This document shows, piece after piece, positions 54,971 to 63,112 of a stretch of DNA of 64,000 nt (its first letter is position 1; each line of letters opens with the position of its first letter). The stretch spans positions 170,632-234,631 of the IMG/VR virus record IMGVR_UViG_3300029258_003221. One strand, written 5' to 3'. The notes beneath the pieces are model-generated. The model searched no databases. It saw only the letters and a list, made by a program, of their open reading frames with translations, and was not told the origin of the DNA. Made by a program: the position numbers and the translations under genes.

Positions 54971-55570
54971 TCAATAAGAAACAGATTTCAGAACCGTTTC
55001 GATTCTTTGTCTGATTTTTTCAAACACAGGTCTTCCAAACTCAGCAATGATTTCGTCTTTTCTTGCCTCAAAAGCTTCAAACAGACCCTTTGCTCTGTAG
55101 AAATACTTTCGTGCATAACGCTTATCGCCAGAATTCAAATAATCTCTGACATTGCAAAGTCTGTCAGCAATCTTCACAACTAATGCAACAAGACTCTTGT
55201 TGATAAAATCTGCAAGATGCTCTGACTTTTCTTTCTGATAATCCTGTGGCGATTCATCAGGAAGACGATCTCGAAAAGTAAGCTCACCAACGTAATCAGC
55301 CACTTCTCTATTAAGCAAATCAGCTATCACTGATAGATCTTGATCTGTACCCTCATCGACATCGTGATTAAGAGCAGTAAGCCAAATATTGAGGTGCCGA
55401 GCATCTCTGATTCCGAAATGAAAAATCTCACGCATCACATCAAGCGGATGAATAAGATACGGAACCCTTAAATCGCCTTCACCGTTTCTGAAATCGCCAC
55501 CATGCGCTTTGGCAATAAAATCAATTGCAAAGGAAATGGCATCTTGTGGTGTGTTAAACTCTGTACTCAT
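54971..55570 (-). CDS. HD-domain hydrolase, SpoT/MESH1-like
   Basis: AH...R...PYLIHP...ALNHDVDEG...VKIADRLCN. Confidence 0.8.
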   Translation of the reverse strand: MSTEFNTPQDAISFAIDFIAKAHGGDFRNGEGDLRVPYLIHPLDVMREIFHFGIRDARHLNIWLTALNHDVDEGTDQDLSVIADLLNREVADYVGELTFRDRLPDESPQDYQKEKSEHLADFINKSLVALVVKIADRLCNVRDYLNSGDKRYARKYFYRAKGLFEAFEARKDEIIAEFGRPVFEKIRQRIETVLKSVSY

Positions 55571-55606
55571 GTTTGCATGGTACGGCAAAAAGATTTGGCT
55601 GTAAAG

Positions 55607-56722
55607 TCAGGACTTCAAAGAAATTTGAACCAATTCATTTGGCGATCTGGCATTTTCCACTGGAGGAGGAACGCAATTGAATGGCTTTGGGTAAGTAAGA
55701 GGAACATTCAAATCAATTGCTCTCTGCATCGCCTTATCTGCATTTCGTTCGAAAATCTCCACATTTTTATGGTTCAAAAGAATCTCGCCAAGAGAAACAT
55801 TGCCATTCTGATCATGTGTTGGAAGCATCACCATCTTGTCCACACCCAAATCAGCGGCAGTTTCCACCATATCTGTCATCTCGGAAACATTCAACAAATT
55901 GATGTTATTCCAAATTGTAGTGATATGTCTCTCTTTGCCTCCATGTTCTTCACGAAGTTCCATATAGTTTTTGATATTTTTGATGATGTTGTTGTAAGCA
56001 TCAATTCGACGTATCTTAATGAAAGTATCTGGTGTCGCTGCATCAATTGAAAAACTGATATCTGACCAACCAACTTCTGCAAAGAATCGTTCATTTATTT
56101 TTGGAATCAACAGAGTTGCATTAGTGTTAGTTTCAAACCTGATTTGATCACGATAACGTGGAAACTCCAACCATTCAAAAACCTGAAAAACCTGATCTTT
56201 CCAAAATGGCTCAGCGATACCCAAAACACACAGGTGCTTAAGAAAAGGCATAATCGGCCTTGCTTTATCACAAAGAAAACCAGTTAAATCTTCTTGCTTA
56301 GGTTTTCGATGGTTTCTGATGCACATAATGCAAGCCGGTTTTTCATCTGATGGAATCAACCCACCGATGTTGCAATGTGAATCGGGAAGACAAATTTCAA
56401 GATATGTTGGATAAGTAAACTTCTTGTAAGCTTTGAATGGCACTGGTTCCTTTTCTCTAACAAGAAAAGGACAAACATTCCAACTCTTGCAGATTGAATG
56501 CAATTCACCTTTCATTGTAGATTCACGAATGGCCTGAGCACGAGGGCTGTTCCAAATGTCTAAAATTTCATCGTCTATCAAACTACCAAGTTGTTCCAAT
56601 TGATAGCAACACGTTGAAACATTCCCATCTGCATTCAATATGCATTTCGTAAAAGGCAACCCACAGAAAGCTTGATGCTCAACAATATCTTCATGATGTA
56701 CTGGGTTTATTTTGAAGGTCAT
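55607..56722 (-). CDS. SPASM + radical SAM protein
   Basis: N-terminal C..PF...DGNV..CC...GSL...IWNS; cluster motif C-X13-CIMC; GIAEP. Confidence 0.85.
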   Translation of the reverse strand: MTFKINPVHHEDIVEHQAFCGLPFTKCILNADGNVSTCCYQLEQLGSLIDDEILDIWNSPRAQAIRESTMKGELHSICKSWNVCPFLVREKEPVPFKAYKKFTYPTYLEICLPDSHCNIGGLIPSDEKPACIMCIRNHRKPKQEDLTGFLCDKARPIMPFLKHLCVLGIAEPFWKDQVFQVFEWLEFPRYRDQIRFETNTNATLLIPKINERFFAEVGWSDISFSIDAATPDTFIKIRRIDAYNNIIKNIKNYMELREEHGGKERHITTIWNNINLLNVSEMTDMVETAADLGVDKMVMLPTHDQNGNVSLGEILLNHKNVEIFERNADKAMQRAIDLNVPLTYPKPFNCVPPPVENARSPNELVQISLKS

Positions 56723-57450
56723 ATGAACAAGGTGTCCTCAAAATAATGTGCCAAATCTGGACGATTTTCCATAACATATGAATACAACTCACGATAATTA
56801 CTGATCACTTCGCTTTGTCTTTTAGTTTGCTGTTTCACCATTGGTATCTTCAAAGCCTTGGGTTTTACTTCAAGAAAATACTGAACTTCATTGAAAATAC
56901 CTTGTGGAGATTCATCCATGTCTTCGTAAGTCACTTCCAATATCGGCACACCCTTCATCTCTTCACGTAAGTTTTGTTGCCATTCTCTGCTGCGATTCCA
57001 CGCAAACAAAAAATGCTCTGGAGTAATTTCAACAGTTGTTTTGTATTCTTGAAAACTCCAATTGTTCTCCTGATCAGCTAACAGTTGTGATGTCATTCTG
57101 TTTAACAAATTATTACGTGTGAGATGAATTACACTCCATTGTTCTTCACGCACGTGATCCCATAAACAACGCCAATCGGGTTTTCTCGCACAAACGTAAT
57201 TCAACTTAAACCCAACCGCTCTCAAGCCTTTGTTTTTTGCGTATGTAGACAGAACGTTTTTTATGTAATTGACAGGGTTACCATTGTCTTCCAAAACAGG
57301 TATTTGCTGATTGAATAAGCTCTTTTTTCTTATTGCTTTGTCGCTACCAAATATTTCTCCAAAACAAAAAATACCGGGATGAGAGTTTAAAGATGTCGCT
57401 AACATCTGATAACCCGAACGCAATTCAGCAACAATAACAAAATTTTTCAT
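56719..57450 (-). CDS. Stf0-like sulfotransferase
   Basis: RSG..L...LNSHP....GEIF; IHLTR.N....S; YED. Confidence 0.8.
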   Translation of the reverse strand: MKNFVIVAELRSGYQMLATSLNSHPGIFCFGEIFGSDKAIRKKSLFNQQIPVLEDNGNPVNYIKNVLSTYAKNKGLRAVGFKLNYVCARKPDWRCLWDHVREEQWSVIHLTRNNLLNRMTSQLLADQENNWSFQEYKTTVEITPEHFLFAWNRSREWQQNLREEMKGVPILEVTYEDMDESPQGIFNEVQYFLEVKPKALKIPMVKQQTKRQSEVISNYRELYSYVMENRPDLAHYFEDTLFI

Positions 57451-58520
57451 AACGTAATCTGAACCAATCTATCAGTCAGTCCCATATCCAGTGGTCTTAA
57501 AAAGTTGTACGGCACACCTAGTTTTTCACACTTCTCAATGATGTCTTCCTGTGCCTTTTTGAATTTGCCGCAATTCTTTTCGTTAACGAGAATAACGTGA
57601 TTAAAACCATCTGTGGGATTAAATTCTATGTATTCTACATTAGCCTTGGCAGCGATGTTAACCATATCCAAAACCTCATGTAAATTCATGACGTTGATAT
57701 TATTGTGGATTCTAAGGAACTGCCGCTCTCTGACACGAGCTTTTGAAAAAGCATAAAGGTGTTCCAACACAGTGTCAAAAACAGGAAGAATGCGAATCCC
57801 TTGATATGTTTCAGGGCTGGCTGCATCTATTGAAAAATTGGTGATAGAATATGGAGCACGTTTCAACCACTCTTCTCTTCTTTTTTTATTGAGGGGTATT
57901 CCATTGGTCGTTGTGCTCATTGTGATGCCATCAGAATATTTGTCATATTCAATTGCATCCATCATTTCGAAAATCATATCTTTCCAAAATGGCTCAGCAA
58001 TTCCTTGTATGTGTATTTGGTGTAAATTTGGAACAATGTGTTTAATTCGTTCCATCACTTCCATGATCCGATTTTCTTCGGGCTGGAACAAAGGGTTAGC
58101 ACGCTCGCACATTACACATGCTGGATGTTCTTCATTTGGATTTTGAAGCCCAACATTACAGTGTGTATTTGGAAGATCCACTTCAAGAAAATTTGGATAT
58201 TCATTGTACGTTATATTTTCTTTCGGATAAGGCAACTTCATCTTAGTGAACGGACAACCGGGAACCTGACAAAGAGAATGCAATTCTCCTTCCAGCGTTT
58301 TCTCCCTTATTTCTTCCGCTAAATCACCAAACCAAATTTCATCAAATGGTTGATCAAATACATTTCCAATATAAGGCGATTGAGGCGCATTGTTTGTTTT
58401 CAAATGCACTAAACCAGCATCAACACTGGGAGGACGCTGAAAACAACAAAAGGCCACATTGCCTTCGGCTGTGACTCTTGCACGATTAAACGGATATGGG
58501 CAGTAAGCTTCTACATACAT
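57447..58520 (-). CDS. SPASM + radical SAM protein (paralog of 55607..56722)
   Basis: YCPYPF...EGNVAFCC...IGNV; C-X13-CVMC; GIAEPFWK; FSIDAA. Confidence 0.85.
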   Translation of the reverse strand: MYVEAYCPYPFNRARVTAEGNVAFCCFQRPPSVDAGLVHLKTNNAPQSPYIGNVFDQPFDEIWFGDLAEEIREKTLEGELHSLCQVPGCPFTKMKLPYPKENITYNEYPNFLEVDLPNTHCNVGLQNPNEEHPACVMCERANPLFQPEENRIMEVMERIKHIVPNLHQIHIQGIAEPFWKDMIFEMMDAIEYDKYSDGITMSTTTNGIPLNKKRREEWLKRAPYSITNFSIDAASPETYQGIRILPVFDTVLEHLYAFSKARVRERQFLRIHNNINVMNLHEVLDMVNIAAKANVEYIEFNPTDGFNHVILVNEKNCGKFKKAQEDIIEKCEKLGVPYNFLRPLDMGLTDRLVQITL

Positions 58521-58542
58521 GCTTTAATATAGATATCCATAT

Positions 58543-58911
58543 TCAAAACTGAACTTCTTCTTTGGGCACTTCCAAGCCACAATATGGACAATGCTTCCAA
58601 TCCAATTCAATTTCCCCTTCGCAGCCTGAACAAGTCGGGTCGGCATCATCGTGCCAATGATCTTTTCGATGATAGAATATCTGGAGCAAAATAATTAAAA
58701 CTGGAACAAAAGAGGCAACTTGCTTCACGATAAAAAGAGTTGATGAATCATGCCAAGCTCTGATAAACAACAGAGAAAACCCAATCAAAAGAAAGATGTG
58801 GTATGTTATGGAAAGGTCACGAACTTCTCGATGTACGTGAATCTTCCAAACCTGCATGAAATAACCACCTGACAAAAATAATATTGCTAACCAAGGTAAG
58901 TATTCCCACAT
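58543..58911 (-). CDS. PQ-loop/SemiSWEET-like membrane protein with C-terminal zinc ribbon
   Basis: three TM segments, YFMQVWKI...VRDLS; CSGC...CPYCG. Confidence 0.7.
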   Translation of the reverse strand: MWEYLPWLAILFLSGGYFMQVWKIHVHREVRDLSITYHIFLLIGFSLLFIRAWHDSSTLFIVKQVASFVPVLIILLQIFYHRKDHWHDDADPTCSGCEGEIELDWKHCPYCGLEVPKEEVQF

Positions 58912-58925
58912 CTTATCCTCCTGAA

Positions 58926-59687
58926 TCATTCTCGCATGTTTTGCAAGAAGTCTTTATCTAAATCTATATGCTTCATTTTATCCACGCATATGTAACGAGT
59001 GTAATATTTCTTGTCTTCTGGAAGACAATCATCTGGCATCACTTCGCCATTGGTTGCATCAACATAACAATCAAAATCAACGTGATAATGACCAAAGAAA
59101 TGAATTTTAGGACGATGAAACGCAGCCATTACCTGTAGCAATTGAGCTGTTTTGGTTTTAATTACTGAATTAGAAAAGCCGAAATTAAATGCTATTCTGG
59201 GATTCGTCACATAAGGCACGACATTCAAAGGAGCATCATGTGAGATAACAAAATCAGGTTTGACTTCTTTGTAAAGCTTTAAAGCTTCCTCTCCCTGCTC
59301 TACAGTCAATTCTTCTTCTTCCCACCAATCAACACCAAGACTACGATTTACTTTATCTATGCTAAATGCACCTCGAATAAAAAACACATCACCAAATTCA
59401 GGGATTGTATGAACTCCAAAATCCCCCAAGAAATGAGGATAGTTTCCCATGATAGCATAGTTATCATGGTTGCCAGCTAACACTTTATGGTGCTGTGGAT
59501 CAAGTTCATCCAAAACATTATACATAAAACCCAAATCACCTATCTGAATGGTGTATTCGGGTTCGGATAAACCACTGGGGCTATGTCCTTTTGTTAATCT
59601 TCTATACCACTTATGATAGCCATGAATATCCCCGACGATGCGGAGAAAAGAAGTCTTATCATGGCTGAGAGTTCGATTGATTGTCAT
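58926..59687 (-). CDS. calcineurin-like metallophosphoesterase
   Basis: GDIHG, IGD, GNHD, ISHDAP, FGHYH. Confidence 0.9.
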   Translation of the reverse strand: MTINRTLSHDKTSFLRIVGDIHGYHKWYRRLTKGHSPSGLSEPEYTIQIGDLGFMYNVLDELDPQHHKVLAGNHDNYAIMGNYPHFLGDFGVHTIPEFGDVFFIRGAFSIDKVNRSLGVDWWEEEELTVEQGEEALKLYKEVKPDFVISHDAPLNVVPYVTNPRIAFNFGFSNSVIKTKTAQLLQVMAAFHRPKIHFFGHYHVDFDCYVDATNGEVMPDDCLPEDKKYYTRYICVDKMKHIDLDKDFLQNMRE

Positions 59688-61377: not shown

Positions 61378-62130
61378 TTAATCAAATTTTTTGTTGTGTT
61401 TATCGATTTTAGCTTGGAGGCTCTCCAGTGTATCTACGGAATTCGATAGAAGATTGACATTTTCGTTCTTCTCTTCGGCCTTTTTCACAGCTTCCAGTTC
61501 ACTTTGTCCAGCTAATGCAATGAAAATTGAAATCGCAATGAGCATCACATGGCCCATCATGAAACCAAAACCGGCAAGCAACACACAGCAAACCTGACCA
61601 ATTCGTGTTGCGTACAGAGTGGCTTTCAAACGAGGCAACTTAAACTGCAATGTTGCCCTCAACAATCTACCTCCATCCATGGGAAATATTGGAAGAAGAT
61701 TAAAGAACAAGATAACGATATTTACTGCTGCAATTTTGACCCAAATGGGTTCTGGTATAAATGGTATCGTTAAAAAAGAGAAAAATGGAATCAACAACAC
61801 GTTAACCAATGGACCCGCCGCAGAAACAACCAACTCCTCTTTTGGAACTGGTTGAAATTCCATGTAAGCTGCTCCCCCAATGGGGTAAAGGTAAATATGA
61901 TGAACTTTCCAGTGATAGTATTGAGCAGCTATACAATGGCCAAATTCATGAAGAATGACAATTAAGAACACGCCCAACAAAATGACTGAATTACTGGAAC
62001 TACTTTTCAAATCCACGAACAACAACAACCCAAAGAAGATGGTCCAGCTCCAATGCAAATAAACCGGAACTTTAAACCACTTCCCAAGAGGGATGGTAAG
62101 GTAATCAAAAATGTTCTTTTTAACTTCCAT
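61378..62130 (-). CDS. M50 site-2 membrane metalloprotease (SpoIVFB-like)
   Basis: HEFGH, IGG, AAGPLVN, NLLPIFPMDGG. Confidence 0.92.
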   Translation of the reverse strand: MEVKKNIFDYLTIPLGKWFKVPVYLHWSWTIFFGLLLFVDLKSSSSNSVILLGVFLIVILHEFGHCIAAQYYHWKVHHIYLYPIGGAAYMEFQPVPKEELVVSAAGPLVNVLLIPFFSFLTIPFIPEPIWVKIAAVNIVILFFNLLPIFPMDGGRLLRATLQFKLPRLKATLYATRIGQVCCVLLAGFGFMMGHVMLIAISIFIALAGQSELEAVKKAEEKNENVNLLSNSVDTLESLQAKIDKHNKKFD

Positions 62131-63112
62131 GTCTCACTCTTCCTTTTTCGAGATAATCTTTCCATCTGACCTGCATGTATTGATGGTTGAGATCAAACGT
62201 CTTCTTGACATCGATCTCACCTTCCTGTGAAACCTGCTTAATTGTCTTGTTGCCATAATGATGAACCAAAGGTGCGTGCAGGGCATACACTTTCAATCCA
62301 GCTTCTTTGAGCCTCAGACTCAAATCAGCATCCTCACAATATGCAAAAGTCAATTGCTTATTGAATAGACCATGCTCTTCGTAAGTGTCTCTGCTGAGAC
62401 AAAGACACCAACCCATGATGTAATCAACATCATAACCAAAACCAGAATCTACTCCCAATCCTGTTTCATTCAACATTCCGCCAAGCTGGCCCACAACTCC
62501 TACGTCTTCGTGTGTTTGAAGGAAAGCAATCATTGCCGAATCCCAACCTTCAAACACAACAGTGTCGCTGTTGAGAAGAATGATATAATCTCCATCTCCC
62601 CAACCAGCCAATTCATTGTTCGGCTTTATGAAGCCAATATTTTTCTCACTTCGCAACAGCTCGATTTCACCACTGACACTCAATTGTTCAAGATACTCAC
62701 GTGTAGGGGTGTCTGAACCGTTGTCCCAAACAAACAAACGATACTCAACAGTGTGTTCTTTGATGGACTTCAAACAATTTTGAACATATTCCAGTTGATC
62801 TTTGACAACAACAATGATGTCTTTAGTTGCAACATTATTATCCATCCACTCTGCTGTCAGGTCTAATTCTTCTCTAATTTGGCGTCCGTACAGAGCATAA
62901 GTGTTTTGTCTGGTTATTTCAGGCGATTCCGCAGCATTATCTTTCCACAAAGCTGTCCCGCACTCTTCACTACAAACTAATTTGTTGAGGACTTTATCTT
63001 TCCAACGTGTAAAACTTTGGCAATGATCACAAGCTCCCAAATCGCCTCTGACCATTACCGTATGACCAAAATCATGTGAACCTCCATCGGGATATCTCTG
63101 TTCAAACTTCAT
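62120..63112 (-). CDS. GT2 glycosyltransferase with N-terminal zinc-finger-like domain
   Basis: WDNGSD, NIGF...N, LLNSD, GWCL, EDADLSLR; N-terminal CDHC...CSEEC. Confidence 0.88.
   Translation of the reverse strand: MKFEQRYPDGGSHDFGHTVMVRGDLGACDHCQSFTRWKDKVLNKLVCSEECGTALWKDNAAESPEITRQNTYALYGRQIREELDLTAEWMDNNVATKDIIVVVKDQLEYVQNCLKSIKEHTVEYRLFVWDNGSDTPTREYLEQLSVSGEIELLRSEKNIGFIKPNNELAGWGDGDYIILLNSDTVVFEGWDSAMIAFLQTHEDVGVVGQLGGMLNETGLGVDSGFGYDVDYIMGWCLCLSRDTYEEHGLFNKQLTFAYCEDADLSLRLKEAGLKVYALHAPLVHHYGNKTIKQVSQEGEIDVKKTFDLNHQYMQVRWKDYLEKGRVRHGS

What the first reader, a model, noticed from the sequence alone, without database searches (positions are those of the whole stretch)
55607..58929. Radical SAM pair with a CX13CX2C cluster motif flanking a sulfotransferase
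Seen: two paralogous proteins with N-terminal SPASM and C-terminal radical SAM domains, both with exactly 13 residues between the first two cluster cysteines and GIAEP for GGEP. They overlap a Stf0-like sulfotransferase on either side, with a PQ-loop transporter upstream and GT2/GT-A genes nearby. Established: the canonical motif is CX3CX2C, rare expanded variants exist (e.g. CX14CX2C in some QueE), and rSAM/SPASM enzymes include sulfatase maturases and sugar-modifying enzymes. Inference: an undescribed pathway making sulfated or radically modified glycans on virion, host surface or DNA.
Basis: partly seen in the sequence, partly recalled or inferred. Interest (0 to 1): 0.65.

Follow-up and report, generated by a model that had tools for sequence, protein, structure and literature searches.

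The report
Phage radical SAM pair with sulfotransferase
A huge freshwater phage carries two sister radical SAM enzymes with an unusually long iron-sulfur-binding loop, joined by a NodH-like sulfotransferase; they most likely tailor sugars, but the product is unknown and the loop is a changeable insertion, not a new cluster type.

Summary
Three translationally coupled genes on the minus strand encode rSAM-B (357 aa), a sulfotransferase (243 aa) and rSAM-A (371 aa). Both rSAMs have an N-terminal twitch-type Fe-S domain and a C-terminal radical SAM barrel. Both have CX13CX2C and GIAEP, and neither has a CX3CX2C.

Corrections:
- The spacing is not fixed. In 93 family members it is 13 (49), 12 (26), 14 (6), 11 (1), 5 (6) or 3 (5, two of them the outgroup). 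Short loops are nested inside long-loop clades, so this is a labile insertion in the canonical loop, as in QueE.
- The N-terminal domain has five invariant Cys, so it is a twitch domain, not a full SPASM.
- The sulfotransferase is NodH-like rather than Stf0-like.
- The PQ-loop call is weak.

The proteins belong to a virus-dominated, uncharacterised offshoot of NCBIfam N_Twi_rSAM, whose true members have CX3CX2C and GGEP.

In related 130-690 kb phage contigs, rSAM-A and rSAM-B orthologues are conserved and the sulfotransferase is optional. It is present in 2 of 6 loci found through rSAM-B. Where present, it sits beside a family rSAM in 7 of 8 loci.

Neighbours and domain fusions point to sugar or glycan tailoring. 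The substrate is not established.

The parts
57447..58520 (-). rSAM-B: N-terminal twitch domain plus radical SAM barrel, 357 aa
   Evidence: ORF. Pfam SPASM 40.1 bits and Radical_SAM 29.7 bits. NF033640 gives 65 bits against a cut-off of 170. AF2 model has pLDDT 88.6. The barrel matches solved rSAM enzymes at Z 14-16. There are 239 homologues, many about 60% identical.
58107..58160 (-). rSAM-B cluster loop, CX13CX2C (C121, C135, C138)
   Evidence: Translation. All three Cys are conserved in 33 of 33 sequences, and there is no CX3CX2C in the protein.
58254..58502 (-). rSAM-B twitch-type auxiliary Fe-S domain (C7, C25, C26, C84, C89)
   Evidence: Translation. Five invariant Cys. The family profile aligns to the BtrN twitch domain in the PDB.
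56719..57450 (-). NodH-like PAPS-type sulfotransferase, 243 aa, ATGA-overlapped with both rSAM genes
   Evidence: Pfam Sulfotransfer_3 at E 6e-5, 23.8 bits, below cut-off. The family profile hits PDB 9vki NodH at E 1e-11. R11/G13 and H109/R112/S121 are invariant. Junction sequences.
55607..56722 (-). rSAM-A: paralogue of rSAM-B, 371 aa
   Evidence: 33% identical to rSAM-B, E 4e-64. Pfam SPASM 39.3 bits. NF033640 gives 69 bits. Orthologues are 48-81% identical in related phage contigs.
56321..56374 (-). rSAM-A cluster loop, CX13CX2C (C117, C131, C134)
   Evidence: Translation. Conservation.
56471..56665 (-). rSAM-A twitch-type auxiliary Fe-S domain (C20, C38, C39, C78, C84)
   Evidence: Translation. 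Conservation.
58543..58929 (-). Small membrane protein with three predicted helices and a C-terminal CxxC...CPYC zinc ribbon. It is possibly a single PQ-loop (SemiSWEET-like) unit.
   Evidence: Pfam PQ-loop at E 0.004, 17.3 against 22 bits. Orthologues are 47% identical in L004 and L008. The AF2 model shows three helices but only pLDDT 63. Inconclusive.
58926..59687 (-). Calcineurin-like metallophosphoesterase, conserved just upstream of rSAM-B in related phages
   Evidence: Pfam Metallophos 26.6 bits. phrog_1649 at E 8e-23. Synteny.
54971..55588 (-). SpoT/RelA-type HD hydrolase domain protein, the conserved downstream neighbour of rSAM-A. It is probably a separate function.
   Evidence: Pfam HD_4 and TIGR00691 at E 7e-11. 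Synteny.
62120..63112 (-). GT2 glycosyltransferase, part of the conserved ion channel-GT2-M50-ClpX block upstream of the rSAM island
   Evidence: Pfam Glycos_transf_2 55.1 bits. Orthologues are 44-49% identical, and there are one to three GT2 genes in relatives.

Best explanation
The three overlapping genes are a co-translated tailoring unit inside a variable sugar/glycan-modification island of a clade of huge freshwater phages.

rSAM-A and rSAM-B are functional radical SAM enzymes of an N-terminal-twitch architecture. Three invariant Cys bind the SAM-cleaving [4Fe-4S] cluster. The loop between Cys1 and Cys2 carries a 9-11-residue insertion into the canonical CX3C (CN[IV]GG...P...AC[IV]MC), which gives CX12-14CX2C. 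Four of the five invariant N-terminal Cys hold one auxiliary cluster.

I infer that each paralogue abstracts a hydrogen atom from a sugar C-H. This would give oxidation or epimerisation of the BtrN/DesII kind, with the auxiliary cluster taking or returning the electron. The NodH-like enzyme would then transfer sulfate from host PAPS to a hydroxyl of the same sugar or glycan.

The glycan scaffold would be built by the nearby GT2 enzymes. In sister phages it would be decorated instead, or in addition, by a NodU-like carbamoyltransferase, extra rSAM paralogues, or LicD with a cytidylyltransferase.

Shown: the genes, the motifs, their conservation, the fold, the synteny and the fusions. Inferred: the substrate class, the reaction type, the order of steps, and whether the glycan ends up on the host envelope or on the virion.
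For: Enzymes intact:
- Eight invariant Cys, in a 5 + 3 split.
- Confident rSAM barrel model, pLDDT 88.6, with Z 14-16 to viperin, SuiB, BlsE, SkfB, DesII, anSME and MoaA.
- The N-terminal domain aligns to the BtrN twitch domain.

Loop is an insertion in the canonical motif:
- True N_Twi_rSAM members have CX3CX2C and GGEP.
- Family members with 3-, 5- and 11-residue loops align at the same Cys.
- QueE is the precedent for CX14CX2C with a canonical cluster site (PMC4389238).

Coupling:
- ATGA overlaps at both junctions.
- The sulfotransferase is adjacent to a family rSAM in 7 of 8 loci.

Sugar context:
- The sulfotransferase profile matches NodH at E 1e-11.
- NodU-like carbamoyltransferase lies in the same slot in L004, L005, L008 and L009.
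- One to three GT2 genes lie upstream in all relatives.
- LicD plus a cytidylyltransferase are in L052.
- Distant family members are flanked by GT25/GT1/GT9, or by Gly_transf_sug, WbqC, DegT, Sulfotransfer_4 and Galactosyl_T.
- Canonical N_Twi_rSAM triplets lie beside GT4 and AsnB in a bacterial MAG.
- Family members P0149, P0156, P0166 and P0199 carry a 'GWAWDP' repeat domain. A search with P0166's copy finds it elsewhere fused to GT2, GT4, methyltransferase and sulfotransferase domains.
Against: - No member of this subfamily, nor of N_Twi_rSAM, has a known substrate.
- Structural neighbours include peptide-modifying and nucleotide-modifying rSAMs at the same Z as sugar-modifying ones.
- The sulfotransferase is absent from 4 of 6 related loci found through rSAM-B, so the rSAMs do not need it.
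- In T4-like relatives the gene sits among tail-fibre genes with 2OG oxygenases, which also fits protein modification.
- No nucleotide-sugar synthesis genes and no PAPS synthesis genes were found in the 234 kb fragment, which is only 44% complete.
- Cluster ligation by Cys1 is inferred from conservation.
Confidence: 0.5

Rival explanations
1. The rSAMs modify a protein or peptide: a virion protein such as a collagen-like fibre, or a RiPP-like peptide. The sulfotransferase would then sulfate that protein, or a glycan on it.
For: - SPASM/twitch rSAMs are typical peptide maturases, and SuiB, CteB and SkfB are among the top structural matches.
- In T4-like myovirus relatives the gene lies between collagen/S74 tail-fibre genes and sheath/neck genes, next to 2OG-Fe(II) oxygenases.
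- A C39-family peptidase is conserved a few genes downstream.
- The sulfotransferase profile has weak partial hits to tyrosylprotein sulfotransferases, E about 1e-3.
Against: - No precursor-like small ORF is conserved next to the rSAMs. The three genes overlap with no room for one.
- NodH is the best sulfotransferase match by eight orders of magnitude.
- The C39-like protein has an N-terminal membrane anchor and its only PHROG hit is an endolysin family, so it may be a lysis protein.
- The fusion partners of family members are shared with glycan enzymes.
Confidence: 0.2
2. The genes hypermodify phage DNA, by radical tailoring and sulfation of a base-linked group or sugar.
For: - Phages do use an rSAM in thymidine hypermodification: M6 gp53 (PMC8989533).
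- In the distant homologue locus L030 the rSAM lies between a P-loop kinase with a PLP enzyme on one side and a DNA-methylase-like protein on the other, near DNA polymerase B.
Against: - M6 gp53 is SPL-like with a canonical CX3CX2C, which is a different rSAM family.
- No thymidylate-synthase-like hydroxymethylase was found in the 234 kb record, although the record is incomplete.
- The immediate neighbours are a membrane protein, a phosphoesterase and an HD hydrolase, not DNA enzymes.
- Sulfated DNA has no precedent that I know of (own knowledge).
Confidence: 0.1
3. The rSAMs act on a free nucleotide or another small metabolite, in the manner of viperin or MoaA. This would link them to the adjacent metallophosphoesterase and SpoT-like HD hydrolase rather than to glycans.
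For: - Viperin is among the top structural matches, Z 15.1.
- There are weak MoaA hits for rSAM-B.
- A phosphoesterase and an HD hydrolase flank the island conservatively.
- PRPP synthetase and a nucleoside deoxyribosyltransferase lie nearby in relatives.
Against: - The Z scores do not discriminate between substrate classes.
- The sulfotransferase and carbamoyltransferase families present are sugar-tailoring types.
- The fusions and distant contexts point to glycan enzymes.
Confidence: 0.12
4. The long loop marks degenerate or non-catalytic proteins. Cys1 would not be a ligand and the proteins would not cleave SAM.
For: - Radical_SAM Pfam scores are at or below the cut-off.
- The GGE motif is altered to G[IV]AEP.
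Against: - Cys1, Cys2 and Cys3 are invariant in 33 of 33 sequences that are 29-80% identical to rSAM-B.
- About 100 cluster representatives at 50% identity keep the motif.
- QueE works with CX14CX2C.
- Multiple paralogues are retained in each genome.
Confidence: 0.03

Closest known systems
NCBIfam NF033640 N_Twi_rSAM (twitch domain-containing radical SAM protein; uncharacterised)
   Same: The domain order is the same: N-terminal twitch/half-SPASM, then the radical SAM barrel. It is the best NCBIfam hit for both proteins. True members also occur as tandem paralogues next to glycosyltransferases.
   Different: Scores of 69 and 65 bits are far below the 170-bit cut-off. True members have CX3CX2C and GGEP. 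The window proteins and their roughly 100 cluster representatives mostly have CX12-14CX2C and G[IV]AEP, and are mostly viral.
QueE of Burkholderia multivorans (CX14CX2C)
   Same: It has an expanded loop between Cys1 and Cys2 of an otherwise canonical cluster site. Loop length varies between orthologues (PMC4389238; the B. subtilis QueE state is from my own knowledge).
   Different: There is no specific sequence or family relationship. QueE lacks a twitch domain and has a smaller barrel. The structural match to B. subtilis QueE is Z 10.6, lower than to many other rSAMs.
BtrN, DesII and BlsE (sugar-acting radical SAM enzymes; BtrN defines the twitch domain)
   Same: The family's N-terminal domain aligns to BtrN's auxiliary-cluster domain. 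The barrel matches DesII and BlsE at Z 13.7-14.8. The context is rich in sugar enzymes.
   Different: The auxiliary domain comes before the barrel instead of after it. The cluster loop is expanded. Identity is only 14-17%, and no shared substrate-binding residues were established.
NodH / LPS sulfotransferase (PDB 9vki) and NodU carbamoyltransferase
   Same: The sulfotransferase profile matches NodH over about 195 residues at E 1e-11, with PAPS-binding motifs conserved. The cassette carbamoyltransferase's best NCBIfam hit is NodU. Both are sugar-hydroxyl tailoring enzymes.
   Different: Both are far below the equivalog cut-offs. They are phage-encoded, and no chitin-oligosaccharide synthase or acyltransferase context is present.
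M6 gp53, the radical SAM isomerase of thymidine hypermodification
   Same: It is a phage-encoded rSAM used for a tailoring step.
   Different: It is SPL-like, has a canonical CX3CX2C and no twitch domain. It is clustered with the 5-hmdU kinase, a transferase and a PLP decarboxylase (PMC8989533).

Membership tests
Radical SAM superfamily | Three-Cys motif (canonically CX3CX2C) on the loop after beta-1 that binds the SAM-cleaving [4Fe-4S] | tested here: met
   Met in a variant form. CX13CX2C is present in both proteins, the Cys are invariant in 33 of 33 sequences, and there is no CX3CX2C alternative. Homology of Cys1 with the canonical Cys1 is shown by family members with 3- and 5-residue loops.
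Radical SAM superfamily | Partial TIM-barrel fold | tested here: met
   AF2 model with pLDDT 88.6. Z 14-16 to about 16 solved rSAM enzymes over residues about 108-350. Foldseek E down to 1e-8.
Radical SAM superfamily | GGE-type SAM-binding motif | tested here: inconclusive
   G[IV]AEP replaces GGEP. G173 and E176 are invariant. Whether it binds SAM was not tested.
Radical SAM superfamily | Pfam PF04055 gathering score | tested here: inconclusive
   rSAM-B scores 29.7 against 29.5 (met). rSAM-A scores 17.6 (not met).
Radical SAM superfamily | Reductive cleavage of SAM | not testable with these tools
   This needs purified, reconstituted protein.
SPASM domain (two auxiliary clusters, 7-8 Cys, C-terminal) | Seven or eight Cys, and a position after the barrel | tested here: not met
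   Only five invariant Cys, and the domain lies N-terminal to the barrel. The Pfam SPASM model still hits at 39-40 bits because it covers the shared half.
Twitch domain (one auxiliary cluster, as in BtrN) | About four Cys in a beta-hairpin plus helix unit that aligns to BtrN's auxiliary domain | tested here: met
   The profile aligns to BtrN residues 166-245 at E 0.005, with matching Cys. Five invariant Cys. The domain's position is permuted relative to BtrN.
NCBIfam NF033640 N_Twi_rSAM | Score at or above the curated cut-off of 170 bits | tested here: not met
   69.1 and 65.0 bits. Bona fide members score 172-315 bits and have CX3CX2C and GGEP.
QueE (7-carboxy-7-deazaguanine synthase) | Family-level sequence match | tested here: not met
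   No QueE model appears among the NCBIfam or Pfam hits. The structural match is Z 10.6 only.
Anaerobic sulfatase-maturating enzyme | C-terminal full SPASM with two clusters, and a family-level match | tested here: not met
   No anSME model appears among the hits. The architecture differs. anSMEcpe gives Z 13.6, no better than unrelated rSAMs.
PAPS-dependent sulfotransferase (NodH-like) | 5'-PSB loop and 3'-PB motif, and a family-level match | tested here: met
   The RSG loop (R11, G13) and H109/R112/S121 are invariant in 17 homologues. The profile hits NodH 9vki at E 1e-11. The window protein alone is below Pfam's cut-off (23.8 against 27), but homologues carry PF13469.
Stf0 trehalose 2-sulfotransferase (NF047724) | Equivalog cut-off of 400 bits | tested here: not met
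   16.2 bits. PDB 1tex hits at E 0.017 only.
PQ-loop / SemiSWEET | Three-helix PQ-loop repeat reaching Pfam's cut-off | tested here: inconclusive
   17.3 against 22 bits. Three predicted helices, but the model has pLDDT 63, too low for a fold search. One orthologue (L004) carries a weak precomputed PQ-loop hit.

The most novel reading that the evidence does not exclude
This virus-dominated, expanded-loop, N-terminal-twitch rSAM subfamily would be a previously unrecognised class of radical sugar-tailoring enzymes. Together with phage-encoded NodH-like sulfotransferases and NodU-like carbamoyltransferases, it would let huge phages (and, with other partners, T4-like marine myoviruses) build sulfated or carbamoylated rare sugars on the infected cell's envelope or on virions. 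That would be the first phage pathway to combine radical chemistry with glycan sulfation. The loop insertion might serve as a docking surface for the permuted twitch domain or for a reductase.
Probability: 0.3. Interest if true: 0.7.

Novelty: new variant of a known kind. Interest (0 to 1): 0.5.

Why it matters
Radical SAM enzymology still treats departures from CX3CX2C as rare curiosities. Here a whole family of about 100 clusters at 50% identity, mostly viral, carries CX12-14CX2C and repeatedly reverts to 5- or 3-residue loops. That makes it a natural experiment on what the loop does.

Biologically, huge phages keeping two to four paralogues next to sulfo-, carbamoyl- and glycosyl-transferases suggests that phages remodel glycans by chemistry not yet described for viruses. 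That could bear on receptor masking, superinfection exclusion or virion stability.

No member of this subfamily or of its parent family has an assigned reaction, so one biochemical characterisation would annotate thousands of metagenomic genes.

Tried and rejected
- DNA (blastn) and protein (tblastn) searches of the INPHARED phage records with the locus, rSAM-A and a marine homologue gave no match. The family is therefore absent from deposited phage genomes at that sensitivity.
- PHROGs has no family for either rSAM or for the sulfotransferase.
- A single-sequence scan of genome contigs found nothing. The alignment-based scan found six loci in bacterial MAGs, five of them Bdellovibrionota or Bdellovibrionales and one labelled Chthonomonas.
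- P0210 looked like a natural sulfotransferase-rSAM fusion. Its N-terminal part has only non-significant sulfotransferase similarity: Pfam E 0.08, hhalign probability 2%, BLASTP nothing. I rejected it as evidence.
- The N-terminal extensions of bacterial members (P0162, P0171, P0175, P0180) have no Pfam match.
- Unknown cassette proteins in L003, L004, L005, L027 and L030 gave nothing informative in Pfam.
- P0301 (sulfotransferase plus GWAWDP domain) is not specifically related to the window's sulfotransferase.
- The AF2 model of the PQ-loop-like protein was too poor (pLDDT 63) to search with.
- The sulfotransferase scan of IMG/VR found only one other contig, the one that also holds L008. An earlier attempt with the wider alignment failed for lack of a conserved stretch.
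- I could not measure Cys-Cys distances, because model coordinates are not exposed to scripts.
- Literature searches for N-terminal twitch rSAMs, CX12CX2C or CX13CX2C rSAM motifs, and rSAM with sulfotransferase in phages found nothing on point.
I make no claim that the proteins bind each other.

Full report
WHERE IT IS. The window is the last 64 kb of a 234,631-base IMG/VR virus record that CheckV rates 44% complete, so it is a fragment of a very large phage. All genes in the region are on the minus strand. The same locus, 100% identical at protein level, is also on a 151 kb metagenome contig.

THE OBSERVATION. Three ORFs are joined by ATGA stop/start overlaps:
- rSAM-B, 57447-58520, 357 aa;
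- a sulfotransferase-like protein, 56719-57450, 243 aa;
- rSAM-A, 55607-56722, 371 aa.

A and B are paralogues, 33% identical with E 4e-64. Pfam places a SPASM hit at the N-terminus of each (39-40 bits, cut-off 21.5) and a weak Radical_SAM hit in the C-terminal two thirds. Both proteins read CX13CX2C and GIAEP. A regular-expression check finds no CX3CX2C in either.

IS IT MORE THAN CHANCE? A word-based search found 239 homologues of rSAM-B, many about 60% identical and 345-357 aa long, on contigs of up to 693 kb. In a 33-sequence alignment, with identities to rSAM-B of 29-80%, exactly eight Cys are conserved in every sequence. Five lie in the N-terminal domain: C7, C25, C26, C84 and C89 in rSAM-B numbering. 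The other three are the motif Cys: C121, C135 and C138. All other Cys are variable. The motif is under strong constraint.

WHAT THE MOTIF REALLY IS. The best NCBIfam match for both proteins is NF033640, N_Twi_rSAM (twitch domain-containing radical SAM protein), but at 65-69 bits against a cut-off of 170. I fetched bona fide members (172-315 bits) from bacterial MAGs. They have a canonical CX3CX2C and GGEP.

An exhaustive HMMER search with the family profile gave 192 representatives at E <= 1e-30, about 100 of them full-length matches. In 93 sequences, comprising the full-length representatives (300 aa or more), the window pair, related phage-locus proteins and two canonical outgroups, the Cys1-Cys2 spacing is distributed as follows:

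| Spacing | Sequences |
|---|---|
| 13 | 49 |
| 12 | 26 |
| 14 | 6 |
| 11 | 1 |
| 5 | 6 |
| 3 | 5 (two are the outgroup) |

In a FastTree phylogeny rooted on the canonical members, the 3- and 5-residue loops are scattered at six or more places inside long-loop clades. Branch supports were not examined.

So the long loop is an insertion of 9-11 residues, with the pattern CN[IV]GG...P...AC[IV]MC, into the ordinary CX3C loop. It is ancestral to this subfamily and has been lost repeatedly. 'Exactly 13' is incidental: most rSAM-B orthologues have 14, and small marine phage homologues have 12. The precedent is QueE, whose CX14CX2C forms a canonical cluster site with one extended loop (PMC4389238).

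STRUCTURE. AlphaFold2 with the 33-sequence alignment gives pLDDT 88.6 and pTM 0.86. Residues about 108-350 form a radical SAM barrel that matches many solved enzymes at Z 13.5-16 (Foldseek). These include DUF512, viperin, SuiB, BlsE, Mmp10, PFL-AE, NifB, SkfB, DesII, CteB, anSME and MoaA. Peptide-, nucleotide- and sugar-acting enzymes are tied, so fold alone does not give the substrate.

The N-terminal domain aligns to the twitch domain of BtrN. With five invariant Cys it should hold one auxiliary cluster, not the two of a full SPASM domain. Relative to BtrN and anSME, the auxiliary domain is permuted to the front. ESM Atlas look-alikes are clusters of 50-200 members, mostly Uroviricota. The family is absent from deposited phage genomes at BLAST sensitivity.

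THE SULFOTRANSFERASE. Alone it is below Pfam's cut-off (Sulfotransfer_3, 23.8 against 27 bits). Its homologues carry PF13469, and some sources name them 'LPS sulfotransferase NodH'. In 17 homologues, the RSG loop (5'-phosphosulfate binding) and the IHL.R.N.L....S block (3'-phosphate binding) are invariant. The family profile hits the solved NodH structure 9vki at E 1e-11 over about 195 residues. Stf0 (1tex) is hit only at E 0.017. It is an intact, NodH-like, presumably carbohydrate sulfotransferase.

CONTEXT AND CO-CONSERVATION. Related contigs of 130-690 kb from freshwater metagenomes share a syntenic block:
- ion channel, then one to three GT2 genes, M50 protease and ClpX;
- further on, a metallophosphoesterase, then in some phages the PQ-loop-like protein, then rSAM-B;
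- a variable cassette;
- rSAM-A, then a SpoT-like HD hydrolase;
- further on, a C39-like peptidase.

rSAM-A orthologues are 48-81% identical and rSAM-B orthologues 53-63%. Both groups are conserved, and genomes carry one to four paralogues.

The cassette varies between phages:
- the sulfotransferase in the window, L008, L050, L051, L052, L060 and L061;
- a NodU-like carbamoyltransferase in L004, L005, L008 and L009;
- extra rSAM paralogues in L005, L008 and L009;
- a LAGLIDADG endonuclease in L005;
- only small ORFs in L003.

Of six distinct phage loci found through rSAM-B, two have the sulfotransferase. Of eight loci found through the sulfotransferase, seven have it directly next to a family rSAM. 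The sulfotransferase therefore depends on the rSAM context, while the rSAMs do not depend on the sulfotransferase.

WHAT POINTS TO SUGARS.
(i) The NodH-like sulfotransferase and the NodU-like carbamoyltransferase are both sugar-hydroxyl tailoring families.
(ii) GT2 genes are always a few kb upstream. L052 adds LicD and a cytidylyltransferase, and L004 adds a GT1 fragment.
(iii) Distant family members (27-36% identical) in T4-like myoviruses sit in a module of DUF6734, a 255-aa paralogue family, the rSAM and 2OG oxygenases, with GT25 in one group of loci and GT1 plus GT9 in another. Another lineage places the rSAM near Gly_transf_sug, WbqC, DegT, Sulfotransfer_4 and Galactosyl_T.
(iv) Canonical N_Twi_rSAM triplets in a bacterial MAG lie beside a double GT4, AsnB and UbiA.
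(v) Four family members (P0149, P0156, P0166, P0199) carry a 'GWAWDP' repeat domain with no Pfam model. A search with P0166's copy finds the domain elsewhere fused to GT2, GT4, methyltransferase, CmcI-GT2 and Sulfotransfer_3 domains.
(vi) The upstream three-helix membrane protein resembles a single PQ-loop (SemiSWEET-like) unit, but only weakly.

MECHANISM PROPOSED. Shown: two intact rSAM paralogues with one SAM cluster and one auxiliary cluster each, and an intact sulfotransferase, all translationally coupled. Inferred: each rSAM abstracts a hydrogen from a sugar C-H and oxidises or epimerises it, as BtrN, DesII and related sugar rSAMs do (own knowledge of those families). The sulfotransferase then sulfates a hydroxyl using host PAPS, since no APS kinase is in the fragment. 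The glycan scaffold comes from the GT2 enzymes. The destination (host envelope, virion or a soluble product) is unknown. I put this at about 0.5.

RIVALS.
- Protein or peptide modification, about 0.2. For: the structural-module context in T4-like phages, the C39-like peptidase, and peptide maturases among the fold matches. Against: no precursor ORF, and a sulfotransferase of the NodH type.
- DNA hypermodification, about 0.1. The only characterised phage DNA-modifying rSAM, M6 gp53, is SPL-like with CX3CX2C (PMC8989533). No hydroxymethylase homologue is present in the fragment.
- Nucleotide or small-metabolite chemistry linked to the flanking phosphoesterase and HD hydrolase, about 0.12.
- Degenerate, non-catalytic proteins, about 0.03. 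This is contradicted by the conservation.

NOVELTY. The architecture is a curated but uncharacterised family, and expanded loops have the QueE precedent. I found no description of a CX12CX2C or CX13CX2C rSAM motif, or of this viral subfamily, in the searchable literature. I rate it a new variant of a known kind, of moderate interest. Interest would rise if the sugar-tailoring role or a function for the loop were shown.

Noticed in passing
L005:9057-10057 (also L006, L007, L010): In a sister phage, a LAGLIDADG homing-endonuclease gene sits on the opposite strand right after rSAM-B. It is followed by a second, 71%-identical copy of the last 62 codons of rSAM-B. This looks like an endonuclease insertion that brought its own 3' end of the target gene.
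   Followed up: partly
window:48157-49809 (-): A 550-aa protein has WGR and PARP catalytic domains. Related phage contigs carry PARP, ART-PolyVal and RNA-ligase genes in the same neighbourhood.
   Followed up: no
window:60033-63884 (-): A block of voltage-gated-type ion channel, GT2, M50 site-2 protease and ClpX with zinc finger is conserved in all related huge-phage contigs.
   Followed up: partly
window:54971-55588 (-): A stand-alone SpoT/RelA-type HD domain protein, possibly a small alarmone hydrolase, is the constant downstream neighbour of rSAM-A in this phage clade.
   Followed up: no
window:53320-53988 (-): A C39-family cysteine peptidase has an N-terminal membrane anchor. Its best NCBIfam match is the PA2778 family, and it has a weak endolysin PHROG hit. 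It could be a lysis enzyme or a leader peptidase.
   Followed up: no
L055:7377-13283; L053:2382-10611; L027:7390-11739: T4-like myovirus contigs share a module between collagen/S74 tail-fibre genes and sheath/neck genes. It holds a 295-aa protein (in L053 and L055), DUF6734, one to three paralogues of an unannotated ~255-aa family, the rSAM and 2OG-Fe(II) oxygenases. GT25 (L027) or GT1 plus GT9 (L053) are added. It may modify the fibres.
   Followed up: partly
P0166:335-657; P0149:336-446; P0199:326-435; P0156:1-128: A repeat domain of about 100 residues, with a GWAWDP...GIGDG.HGF signature, has no Pfam model. It is fused to family rSAMs and, in other proteins, to GT2, GT4, methyltransferase and sulfotransferase domains.
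   Followed up: partly
L036:7200-9023; P0162, P0171, P0175, P0180, P0226: Some bacterial members of the expanded-loop subfamily, including L036 from a Bdellovibrionales MAG, have N-terminal extensions of 230-310 residues without Pfam matches. Two (P0175, P0226) show an SDLDIGII-type nucleotidyltransferase-like motif. In L040 the rSAM is followed by a B12-binding rSAM.
   Followed up: partly
L059 (Ga0180432_10000069:51852-64580): The whole locus recurs on a 151 kb contig of a metagenome. All 17 query proteins are 100% identical except the GT2 (99.7%). The phage was therefore assembled independently at least twice.
   Followed up: no
L062:6001-6726: This is the one sulfotransferase homologue (43% identical) with no family rSAM in the 6 kb upstream or 2 kb downstream that were available. 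The locus contains only small unannotated ORFs.
   Followed up: no
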